The notes under the pieces were generated by a model. That model did no database searches and was not told the DNA's origin. It was given only the letters and a program-made list of their open reading frames with translations. DNA of 63,545 nt, the filler included, from Octopus bimaculoides (taxonomy: Eukaryota), in assembly GCF_001194135.2 (NCBI RefSeq). It is 10 parts of 9 records of this genome, joined end to end, with 100 filler letters (N's around TTAATTAATTAA, not from the genome) between each part and the next. Parts side by side here need not be neighbours in the genome. Positions count along the whole stretch, not along the records: positions 27,253 to 49,597 come from NC_068988.1; 9 more parts are not named here. One strand, given 5' to 3'. The position numbers were made by a program, and so were the translations under genes. Every line of letters starts with the position of its first letter. Within the stretch, counting starts at the first letter, position 1. Below, one piece after another: positions 38,824 through 39,143 of this stretch.

Positions 38824-38894
38824 GGGCATATGGCGTAGAGGTTAAGAGCGCGGGCTACTAACCCCAAGATTCCGAATTCGATTCCAAGCAGTGA

Positions 38895-38975
<81 letters not shown>

Positions 38976-39143
38976 CAACAACAACGACAACATCGAAAAA
39001 TACCTTAGGAATGAGAACCCAGGTTCGAAATTTCCTCAAGACACCTTATGAAGGCTAGATGGTATATCAGCCGAAACGTTGTGTTAACAACAAACAAGAC
39101 GAGGACAAATAGCCGTCAAATGTAAATAATGTAAATAATGTAA
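38824..39143 (+). mobile_element. tRNA-headed SINE with internal (AAT)n and hammerhead-bearing tail (right copy)
   Basis: gggcatatggcgtagagg (A box 38831-38841), gaattcgattcc (B box 38874-38885), (AAT)n(AAC)n, HHR, then tandem aatgtaaat tail. Confidence 0.85.
39040..39085 (+). ncRNA. Minimal type I hammerhead ribozyme motif, G5>U substitution
   Basis: GACAC-CUUAUGA-A-GGCU...AGCC-GAAACGUU-GUGUU; stem I GACAC/GUGUU. Confidence 0.65.

What the first reader, a model, noticed from the sequence alone, without database searches (positions are those of the whole stretch)
38824..39143. tRNA-headed SINE whose 3' tail carries a Penelope-type minimal hammerhead ribozyme
Seen: tRNA-like head with A and B boxes, an (AAT)n/(AAC)n tract, then GACAC-CU(G/U)AUGA-A-GGCU..AGCC-GAAACGUU-GUGUU and a tandem aatgtaaat tail. 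Established: Penelope-like elements carry minimal type I HHRs with palindromic stem III (here AACGUU) that cleave as dimers, while SINE tails normally come from LINE partners. Inference: a Pol III SINE that borrowed a PLE pLTR tail and may be mobilised by PLE RT/GIY-YIG, a SINE-retrozyme hybrid. I do not recall such a family being described.
Basis: partly seen in the sequence, partly recalled or inferred. Interest (0 to 1): 0.9.

Follow-up and report, generated by a model that had tools for sequence, protein, structure and literature searches.

The report
Inverted pair of hammerhead-tailed SINE-like retroposons
The flagged stretch is one half of a 614-bp insertion made of two head-to-head copies of a short non-coding retroposon with a tRNA-like front end and a Penelope-type minimal hammerhead ribozyme near its tail. 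Both ribozymes are now mutated, and closely related kinds of element are already described, so it is a neat but moderate find.

Summary
It missed that this is only the right arm of a near-perfect palindrome. A second, minus-strand copy lies at 38557-38822, about 89% identical, with 8 nt between the two 5' ends.

The whole 614-bp unit (38528-39141) is flanked by a 12-bp direct repeat, AATAAAATTCAC, and carries a 29-nt extra tail at one end only.

The hammerhead belongs to the minimal class found in Penelope-like elements (PLEs). It has an unpaired base 5' of a 7-bp helix II, a 5-bp helix I and a 1-bp helix III with a palindromic ACGU. Each copy has one inactivating core change: G5>U in the right copy, G12>A in the left.

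More than 120 metagenome loci carry the same hammerhead frame. All 28 of 100 searched loci with two hammerhead hits show the same head-to-head arrangement. Four loci I read have 13-14-bp target duplications and a tail at one end. One locus encodes RT plus GIY-YIG.

PLE-type mobilisation is therefore supported by insertion architecture. The tRNA-like head is real but weak: A and B boxes 44 nt apart, 14.7 bits to the tRNA model. Family status, Pol III transcription and the PLE partner are untested.

The novelty claim is overstated: schistosome Sm-alpha is a tRNA-derived SINE-like element with a hammerhead, and retrozymes are already proposed as PLE parasites.

The parts
38516..38527 (.). Left copy of the 12-bp direct repeat AATAAAATTCAC (candidate target-site duplication around the whole unit)
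   Evidence: longest direct match between the two flanks. A match of 12 nt or more is reached in 7/5000 shuffles and in 5/483 genomic window pairs.
38528..38556 (-). 29-nt 3' extension ('tail') present only on the left copy: TTGTCATCTGTCATCGCTTAAATATAGAA in sense
   Evidence: homology between the arms stops at 38557 / 39139. Craig et al. 2021 describe a 30-40-bp tail at one end of PLE insertions. The same is seen in L089, L094, L107 and L088.
38557..38822 (-). Left (minus-strand) copy of the element: tail, hammerhead, body, (AAC)4(AAT)13, tRNA-like head
   Evidence: (I10, I16), 6, 22, 54: about 89-92% identical to the right copy.
38611..38656 (-). Left hammerhead: GAAAC-CUGAUGA-C-GGCUGGAUGGUAUAUCAGCC-AAAACGUU-GUGUU. 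G12>A at 38623 and one helix I mismatch at 38654.
   Evidence: (26.0 bits, E 4e-5).
38704..38754 (-). Internal microsatellite of the left copy: (GTT)4(ATT)13 on the plus strand
38768..38822 (-). tRNA-like head of the left copy: A box 38812-38822, B box 38768-38778, T-arm CCGAG-TTCGATT-CTTGG
   Evidence: Rfam tRNA 14.7 bits, model positions 7-64, the only family at E<=10. A/B boxes.
38823..38830 (.). 8-nt spacer at the palindrome axis (CGGGCATA). GGGCATA may be the first 7 nt of the right copy, in the acceptor-strand position.
   Evidence: (I16: 8 nt between arms).
38831..38898 (+). tRNA-like head of the right copy: A box 38831-38841, B box 38875-38885
   Evidence: No tRNA model hit on this copy.
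38899..38985 (+). Internal microsatellite (AAT)24(AAC)5
38986..39039 (+). Body upstream of the ribozyme, with a second B-box-like GGTTCGAAA at 39022-39030
39040..39085 (+). Right hammerhead: helix I 39040-39044 / 39081-39085; core CUUAUGA 39045-39051 (G5>U at 39047); unpaired A 39052; helix II 39053-39072; GAAA 39073-39076; helix III A-[CG]-U 39076-39079; predicted cleavage after U 39080
   Evidence: MFE predicts helices I and II; 34.7 bits, E 1.4e-7.
39086..39141 (+). 3' tail of the right copy, ending in AATGTAAAT repeats (39119-39141)
39142..39153 (.). Right copy of the 12-bp direct repeat AATAAAATTCAC

Best explanation
Positions 38528-39141 are the fossil of one retrotransposition event of the Penelope-like (PLE) type.

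The template was a short non-coding RNA of about 300 nt. It consisted of a tRNA-derived 5' module with A and B boxes, an internal (AAT)n(AAC)n tract, and a 3' module of about 160 nt. That 3' module carries a PLE-class minimal type I hammerhead 61 nt from the 3' end.

Integration produced two head-to-head copies, a 29-nt tail at one end and a 12-bp target duplication. These features are shown. That a PLE RT/GIY-YIG enzyme recognised the hammerhead-bearing 3' module and made the insertion is inferred from the architecture.

The palindrome axis lies at the start of the tRNA-like module. This suggests the RNA began there, as expected for a Pol III SINE (inferred).

By analogy with its class, the hammerhead could cleave after GUU only as a dimer formed through the palindromic ACGU (inferred, not tested). 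Each extant copy now carries a substitution at an essential core position (G5>U, G12>A), so neither is expected to be active. The insertion is old: the arms differ by about 11%.
For: Palindrome and target duplication:
- Arms 38557-38822 and 38831-39139 with 8 nt between them (I10/I16).
- 12-bp flanking direct repeat (7/5000 shuffles).
- One-sided 29-nt extension.

Hammerhead class features, matching Cervera & de la Pena 2014:
- Helix II of 7-8 bp, helix I of 4-5 bp, an unpaired base 5' of helix II, a tiny palindromic helix III.
- The same paper notes 'dual min-HHRs ~100-700 bp apart on opposite strands'.

The frame in other genomes:
- CTGATGANGGCT...AGCCGAAACGTT occurs in at least 120 metagenome loci.
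- Helices I and II covary across families (score 0.35 against 0.137 shuffled, 0/500).
- A covariance model built from those loci scores the two window copies 34.7 and 26.0 bits; the next best hit in the piece is 11.9.
- L021 has an RVT_1 + GIY-YIG ORF on the same strand as its hammerhead.
- All 28 of 100 loci with two hits have the same divergent (-,+) arrangement.
- L088, L089, L094 and L107 show 13-14-bp target duplications and a conserved tail of about 31 nt at one end only.
- Craig et al. 2021 describe exactly these PLE hallmarks.

Head:
- A/B boxes 44 nt apart, found only at these two sites in 22 kb.
- tRNA model 14.7 bits on the left copy.
Against: - Only one insertion is available. There is no other copy in the 22-kb piece, in viral or metagenome collections, or among predicted proteins. 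A multi-copy family is therefore not shown.
- The tRNA model score is below Rfam's threshold on one copy and absent on the other. ARAGORN finds nothing.
- The lack of TTTT on the sense strand is not significant (P about 0.4-0.5).
- Symmetric palindromic junctions occur at variable 5'-truncation points in the metagenome families (L025, L102). Symmetric arms alone therefore do not prove a full-length 5' end.
- No RT/GIY-YIG gene lies in the piece, and similarity to PLE-associated loci is limited to the ribozyme frame.
- The covariance-model test is partly circular, because the loci were fetched with a pattern taken from this element.
Confidence: 0.6

Rival explanations
1. One-off chimera, not a SINE family. 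An older tRNA-derived retroposon with an (AAT)n/(AAC)n tail happened to lie upstream of a 5'-truncated PLE fragment. A read-through transcript of both was retrotransposed once by PLE machinery.
For: The 68-75-nt head followed directly by a microsatellite looks like a complete small retroposon. PLEs are biased toward inserting into microsatellites and can retrotranspose foreign transcripts in trans (Craig et al. 2021). No second copy was found anywhere.
Against: The palindrome axis coincides with the start of the tRNA-like module, not with an arbitrary upstream point. The collections searched are unlikely to hold this genome, so absence of copies says little. Such a chimera is also how SINE families are born, so this rival differs only in copy number.
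Confidence: 0.22
2. 5'-truncated copy pair of a longer element. The tRNA-like stretch is an internal part of an autonomous or longer non-autonomous PLE, and the snap-back junction fell there by chance.
For: In the metagenome families, symmetric head-to-head junctions lie at many different truncation points. One family carries a tRNA-like stretch (antisense) inside its 3' region.
Against: The junction would have to fall by chance within a few nt of the tRNA +1/+8 position. That is roughly 1% if truncation points spread over several hundred nt, as. In addition, the A and B boxes are in sense orientation with canonical spacing.
Confidence: 0.08
3. An ordinary LINE-dependent SINE, inserted twice or inverted by twin priming, with a chance hammerhead-like motif.
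For: The tail ends in short tandem repeats (AATGTAAAT), as many LINE/SINE tails do. A 12-bp target duplication is also compatible with LINE insertion.
Against: The motif matches a 23-base frame plus helices I and II, with 0 matches in 100 shuffles, and scores 34.7 bits against the class model. Both arms contain the complete element including the tail, which twin priming does not give. A single direct repeat flanks the whole pair rather than each copy. The one-sided 29-nt tail and divergent pairing are class hallmarks.
Confidence: 0.05
4. DNA-level palindrome: a foldback or MITE-like DNA transposon with about 290-bp inverted repeats, a replication-error inverted duplication, or an assembly artefact.
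For: Near-complete palindrome with flanking direct repeat. The scaffold has N gaps.
Against: The arms differ by about 11% and in microsatellite length, which excludes a chimeric-read artefact. The ends are asymmetric because of the 29-nt tail on one side. A 12-bp duplication is unusual for DNA transposons (general knowledge). The content is that of a retroposon: tRNA-like head and PLE-class ribozyme.
Confidence: 0.05

Closest known systems
Sm-alpha / Sj-alpha SINE-like retroposons of Schistosoma (Ferbeyre et al. 1998; Laha et al. 2000; as summarised in PMC2770079 and PMC8490949)
   Same: A short non-coding retroposon that joins a tRNA-derived head (tRNA-Gln-like copies classed as Sm-alpha SINEs) to a type I hammerhead whose helix III is short.
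   Different: Sm-alpha carries a canonical type I hammerhead that Rfam-based searches find in tens of thousands of copies. Here the motif is the minimal PLE class that Rfam models miss. It comes from a different phylum (probably a mollusc; unverified). Here the insertion architecture points to a PLE. Sequence homology was not tested because no Sm-alpha sequence was at hand.
Dispersed minimal hammerheads and 5'-truncated inverted copy pairs of Penelope-like elements (Cervera & de la Pena 2014; Luense et al. 2017; Craig et al. 2021)
   Same: The same ribozyme architecture. The same divergent pairing of two ribozymes a few hundred bp apart. A one-sided tail of about 30 nt and a target duplication of 12-14 bp.
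   Different: Those copies are truncated 3' ends of RT/GIY-YIG elements. Here the sequence between the ribozymes is a tRNA-like head plus a microsatellite, and both arms end at that head.
Metazoan non-LTR retrozymes (Cervera & de la Pena 2020; Li et al. 2026 preprint)
   Same: Non-autonomous, non-coding, hammerhead-bearing elements proposed to use PLE machinery and described as SINE-like.
   Different: Retrozymes are direct tandem repeats whose ribozymes excise 170-400-nt circular RNAs. No tRNA or Pol III head is reported for them. Here there is one ribozyme per unit and the two units are inverted.
Classical tRNA-derived SINEs with LINE-derived tails (for example octopus OR1/OR2 CORE-SINEs, Ohshima & Okada 1994, cited)
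   Same: A tRNA-like head with A and B boxes, short length, a target duplication and a composite modular build.
   Different: There is no CORE domain. The tail carries a hammerhead of the PLE class. The insertion is an inverted pair with a one-sided tail, which LINE-mediated insertion does not give.

Membership tests
Hammerhead ribozyme, minimal type I (PLE class) | Intact catalytic core CUGANGA ... GAAA ... H17 | tested here: not met
   The right copy has U at G5 (39047) and the left copy has A at G12 (38623). Each change is in a different copy, so the shared ancestor most simply had the full core. That is inference.
Hammerhead ribozyme, minimal type I (PLE class) | Three-way junction with helix I and helix II flanking the core | tested here: met
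   Helix I GACAC/GUGUU (5 bp) and helix II GGCU(A)GAU/AUCAGCC (7 bp). MFE folding of the core-restored sequence predicts both. Class model R1 gives 34.7 and 26.0 bits.
Hammerhead ribozyme, minimal type I (PLE class) | Class traits: long helix II (7-8 bp), short helix I (4-5 bp), unpaired base 5' of helix II, 1-2-bp helix III with a small palindromic loop | tested here: met
   All are present. Traits as listed by Cervera & de la Pena 2014. The same frame occurs in at least 120 loci, with covariation.
Hammerhead ribozyme, minimal type I (PLE class) | Match to curated Rfam hammerhead models | tested here: inconclusive
   No hit even at E<=10. The models also miss the motifs in L021, L014, L033, L089, L107 and L008, so the negative is uninformative.
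Hammerhead ribozyme, minimal type I (PLE class) | Self-cleavage (as a dimer) | not testable with these tools
   Needs in vitro transcription of monomer and dimer constructs.
tRNA-derived SINE | Internal Pol III promoter: A and B boxes with tRNA-like spacing at the 5' end | tested here: met
   A box 10/11 and B box 9/11, 44 nt start to start, in both copies. These are the only such pairs in 22 kb, against 0.09 per shuffle.
tRNA-derived SINE | Head recognisably related to a tRNA | tested here: inconclusive
   Left copy 14.7 bits to RF00005 (threshold 29), covering the D, anticodon and T arms. The right copy has no hit. ARAGORN finds none. A resemblance to tRNA-Arg(ACG) is from memory only.
tRNA-derived SINE | Dispersed multi-copy family | not testable with these tools
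   The source genome is not available. No further copy in the piece or in the collections.
tRNA-derived SINE | 3' tail shared with an autonomous partner element of the same genome | not testable with these tools
   No RT gene in the piece. Similarity to PLE-associated loci from other organisms is limited to the ribozyme frame.
tRNA-derived SINE | Pol III transcription with terminator logic | tested here: inconclusive
   There is no TTTT inside either copy on the sense strand, and a T-run lies 6 and 24 nt downstream. Absence of TTTT is expected by chance with P of about 0.4-0.5.
PLE-type insertion (non-autonomous derivative) | Inverted copy abutting the 5' end of the unit | tested here: met
   Hallmark described. 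28/28 two-hit loci are divergent.
PLE-type insertion (non-autonomous derivative) | 30-40-bp tail at one end only | tested here: met
   29 nt at 38528-38556, with none on the right. Compare the conserved tail of about 31 nt in L088, L089, L094 and L107.
PLE-type insertion (non-autonomous derivative) | Target duplication around the whole complex unit | tested here: met
   12 bp. 13-14 bp in L088, L089, L094 and L107.
PLE-type insertion (non-autonomous derivative) | RT + GIY-YIG ORF (autonomous element) | tested here: not met
   No such ORF in 22 kb, so the element is non-autonomous at best.
Non-LTR retrozyme | Direct tandem repeats, each with a hammerhead, giving unit-length or circular RNA | tested here: not met
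   There are only two copies and they are inverted. There is no direct repeat of the unit in the piece.

The most novel reading that the evidence does not exclude
This is a true Pol III-driven, tRNA-derived SINE family whose 3' module was captured from a Penelope-like element and which that PLE's RT/GIY-YIG enzyme mobilises in trans. It would be the first explicit SINE-PLE partnership, parallel to SINE-LINE pairs. It would also be a natural short reporter for the poorly understood PLE integration pathway, with its inverted copies and one-sided tail.
Probability: 0.4. Interest if true: 0.6.

Novelty: new variant of a known kind. Interest (0 to 1): 0.45.

Why it matters
How PLEs integrate is still not understood, in particular why they leave tandem or inverted copies and a one-sided tail. 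No in vitro system exists (Craig et al. 2021). A 300-nt non-coding passenger that reproduces the full PLE insertion signature would show that those features depend on the 3' module and the enzyme, not on the PLE coding body. It would also make a compact substrate for retrotransposition assays.

The locus also bears on an open question: whether the minimal hammerhead is a recognition or processing element of PLEs, or a parasite of them. If the family is real, it extends the SINE concept to a third class of autonomous partner. If it is a one-off, the locus is simply a well-preserved example of known PLE behaviour.

Tried and rejected
- ARAGORN at default and relaxed thresholds found no tRNA.
- Rfam at gathering and E<=10 thresholds gave no hammerhead. 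The microRNA-family hits only reflect the hairpin of the palindrome.
- Exact-pattern scans for the family's own ribozyme sequence gave 0 hits in viral and metagenome collections. The generic frame gave 0 in viral contigs.
- I tried fishing for other copies through spurious ORFs that cross the element. Two protein searches and two exact look-ups found nothing.
- BLAST of head and body against the rest of the piece and against the 120 fetched loci found no further copy. Similarity to the loci is confined to the ribozyme frame.
- I tested the absence of T-runs as Pol III evidence. It is not significant.
- I looked for other tRNA-head/hammerhead combinations in the fetched loci. L061 has A/B boxes 406 nt upstream of its ribozyme, inside a 12/14 direct repeat, but has no tRNA model support, and the count is within chance expectation. 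I rejected it as support.
- A third weak model hit at 44508-44553 has no helix II or GAAA and was rejected.
- An attempt to identify the organism through ORF 44189-44470 returned only widespread transposon-like fragments. My impression that the other repeats look like octopus SINEs is memory only.

Full report
**What is in the sequence.** It has, in order:
- a head, GGGCATA-TGGCGTAGAGGTTAAGAGCGCGGGCTACTAACCCCAAGATTCCGAATTCGATTCC...;
- (AAT)24(AAC)5 at 38899-38985;
- a 54-nt body;
- GACAC-CUUAUGA-A-GGCUAGAUGGUAUAUCAGCC-GAAACGUU-GUGUU at 39040-39085;
- a 56-nt tail ending in AATGTAAAT repeats.

The repeat finder reports arms 38694-38822 / 38831-38959 (87% complementary, 8 nt apart) and 38557-38699 / 38997-39139 (92%). 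Aligning the reverse complement of the left side to the right side shows the same element from head to tail. There are 240 matches, 18 transitions and 11 transversions outside the microsatellite, and the repeat lengths differ. No other copy of head or body exists in the 22-kb piece.

**Boundaries.** Homology between the arms ends at 38557 on the left and 39139 on the right. Beyond the right end comes AATAAAATTCAC (39142-39153). The same 12-mer lies at 38516-38527. It is separated from the left arm by 29 nt that have no counterpart on the right. A direct match of 12 nt or more between the two 90-nt flank windows was reached in 7 of 5000 shuffles and in 5 of 483 equally spaced genomic window pairs. 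The simplest reading is a single 614-bp insertion (38528-39141) with a 12-bp target duplication, two head-to-head copies and a tail at one end only. Two independent SINE insertions would each need their own duplication, and none is seen at the axis. The 11% divergence and unequal microsatellites rule out a chimeric-read artefact.

**The ribozyme.** In hammerhead numbering the right copy reads as follows:
- helix I, 5' strand: GACAC;
- core: C3-U4-U5-A6-U7-G8-A9;
- an unpaired A;
- helix II: GGCU(A)GAU / AUCAGCC;
- G12-A13-A14;
- A15.1-[CG]-U16.1;
- U17, with the cleavage site after it;
- helix I, 3' strand: GUGUU.

The left copy has the canonical G5 but A at G12, plus one helix I mismatch. G5 and G12 are essential core positions (established mutational and structural knowledge). 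Neither extant copy should cleave, and the common ancestor most simply had an intact core.

With up to 1 mismatch, the 23-base frame CTGATGANGGCT(N12)AGCCGAAACGTT matches exactly these two sites, against 0 in 100 shuffles. MFE folding of the core-restored sequence gives helices I and II.

The trait list given by Cervera & de la Pena (2014) for the minimal hammerheads of PLE pseudo-LTRs fits point by point. That list is: helix II of 7-8 bp, helix I of 4-5 bp, an unpaired base 5' of helix II, and helix III reduced to 1-2 bp with a 2-4-nt palindromic loop, so that two motifs must pair to be active. The same paper mentions 'dual min-HHRs ~100-700 bp apart on opposite strands', which is the arrangement here: 378 nt separate the two motifs.

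**Rfam.** No hammerhead model matches, even at E<=10. This is not evidence against the ribozyme. The same models also miss the motifs in six control loci, one of which encodes a PLE protein.

**Relatives elsewhere.** The family's own sequence was not found in viral or metagenome contigs. The generic frame CTGATGANGGCTN{6,20}AGCCGAAACGTT hit at least 120 metagenome contigs, where the scan stopped at its limit. These fall into several families whose helix I and distal helix II differ but stay paired.

On an alignment of 47 distinct motifs the covariation score is 0.35, against 0.137 for shuffles (0/500) and at most 0.178 for slid controls. The three junction-proximal helix I pairs show many double changes. 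A covariance model built from these motifs scores the window copies 34.7 bits (E 1.4e-7) and 26.0 bits (E 4e-5). The next hit, at 11.9 bits, is not a hammerhead. This test is partly circular, because the loci were fetched with a frame taken from this element. The helix I and distal helix II pairing is independent of that frame.

One locus, L021, has an ORF with RVT_1 and GIY-YIG domains on the same strand as its ribozyme.

**Insertion architecture as evidence for the mobilising machinery.** Craig et al. (2021) list as PLE hallmarks:
- 5' truncation;
- partial tandems;
[quoted passage not shown] I could see the same in the fetched loci. In one family, L088, L089, L094 and L107 show target duplications of 13-14 bp. 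They also carry a conserved tail of about 31 nt, either on the outer end of the inverted copy or on the 3' end of the direct copy, but never on both.

Across 100 loci the model finds 28 with two ribozymes. In all 28 the minus-strand copy lies to the left of the plus-strand copy, that is, head to head, mostly 0-760 nt apart. There is no tandem or convergent pair (a few loci are duplicate contigs).

The window locus has exactly this layout: a divergent pair, a 12-bp duplication and a 29-nt tail on one end. LINE twin priming does not duplicate the whole element including its tail.

**The head.** A box TGGCGTAGAGG (10/11) and B box GAATTCGATTC (9/11) start 44 nt apart, as between tRNA positions 8 and 52. 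With these thresholds only the two heads qualify in the 22-kb piece, and shuffles give 0.09 hits per sequence.

The left copy aligns to the Rfam tRNA model over positions 7-64 at 14.7 bits. This includes a good T arm, CCGAG-TTCGATT-CTTGG. tRNA is the only family reported for that stretch at E<=10, but the score is below the 29-bit threshold. The right copy, whose T stem is degraded, gives nothing, and ARAGORN finds nothing.

From memory the head resembles tRNA-Arg(ACG). I could not test that.

The palindrome axis lies 1-8 nt upstream of the A boxes, where a tRNA-derived Pol III transcript would begin. In the metagenome families, symmetric junctions occur at many different truncation points (L025, L102, and the spread of distances). 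Symmetry alone therefore does not prove a full-length 5' end. A random junction falling just at the edge of the tRNA-like module is unlikely, though, on the order of 1%.

Absence of TTTT on the sense strand, with T-runs 6 and 24 nt downstream, fits Pol III but is expected by chance about half the time.

**What remains open.** I could not show any of the following:
- that the element is a multi-copy family;
- that Pol III transcribes it;
- that its 3' module matches an autonomous PLE of the same genome.

No RT gene lies in the piece.

The main rival is a one-off chimera: a read-through transcript from an older tRNA-like retroposon, through its microsatellite tail, into a PLE fragment, copied once by PLE machinery. 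This differs from the SINE reading only in copy number. Even so, the locus shows that an RNA joining this head to this tail was retrotransposed at least once, because both arms contain all modules inside one target duplication.

**Comparison with what is known.**
- Schistosome Sm-alpha and Sj-alpha are SINE-like retroposons with hammerheads. Thousands of tRNA-Gln-like predictions in S. mansoni are Sm-alpha copies.
- Minimal hammerheads are dispersed by the thousand in animal genomes and map to PLE pseudo-LTRs.
[quoted passage not shown] A 2026 preprint argues they derive from PLE pLTRs. No tRNA or Pol III head is mentioned for them.
- My full-text searches found no report of a tRNA-headed SINE with a PLE tail. 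That is only absence of evidence.

The element is not a retrozyme, because it lacks the direct tandem of ribozymes. I rate it a new variant of a known kind. Its interest is moderate. It would rise if a genome-wide family and a matching PLE were shown.

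Noticed in passing
window 27288-27345, 34403-34460, 41893-41950, 47985-48042; and 28519-28567, 33829-33877, 37877-37925: Two other dispersed repeat families are present (D15 and D20). One has a B-box-like GAGTTCAAAT. They look like fragments of a different, more abundant tRNA-derived SINE. From memory they resemble octopus CORE-type SINEs, but the organism was not verified.
   Followed up: partly
window 38772-38881: Several Rfam microRNA-precursor models hit the palindrome axis (MIR7533 48.6 bits, mir-8791 32.2 bits, others), all far below their thresholds. 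They only reflect the long hairpin that a read-through transcript of the inverted pair would form. Such a hairpin could in principle feed small-RNA pathways.
   Followed up: partly
window 39022-39030 (and 38665-38673 on the minus strand): A second B-box-like GGTTCGAAA sits in the body about 20 nt upstream of the ribozyme. The 3' module may itself contain a tRNA-derived remnant.
   Followed up: no
L002, L012, L025, L089, L094, L101, L102, L107 (about 45 nt upstream of each ribozyme): One metagenome hammerhead family carries GAGGGGAGCTACCAGTTGAGCCAC, which reads like the reverse complement of a tRNA 5' half (D arm / A box), at a fixed distance upstream of the ribozyme. Its conserved tail of about 31 nt contains CTGATGAA.
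   Followed up: partly
L061 1055-1635: A 553-nt unit is bracketed by a 12/14 direct repeat, with A/B-box-like sites 406 nt upstream of a minimal hammerhead that lies 41 nt from the 3' end. There is no tRNA model support, so this is possibly chance.
   Followed up: yes
L021, L014, L033, L089, L107, L008: Rfam 15 hammerhead models detect none of the PLE-class minimal hammerheads in these loci at E<=1. Standard annotation is therefore blind to this abundant class.
   Followed up: yes
window 44189-44470 (+): A 93-aa ORF (…WREPKNYHDDCYFCM…) has 50-80% identical relatives in many eukaryotic assemblies, with named hits from a tunicate and a sponge. It is probably a fragment of a widespread transposon-derived protein.
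   Followed up: partly
window 29803-29949 and 40541-40772: Two short minisatellites, with a 42-nt unit x3 and a 30-nt unit x4 (D19 and D16). The piece is otherwise very rich in (TG)n, (TATG)n, (AG)n, (GATA)n and (AAT)n microsatellites and has three N gaps (31486-31579, 33473-33682, 46610-47269).
   Followed up: no
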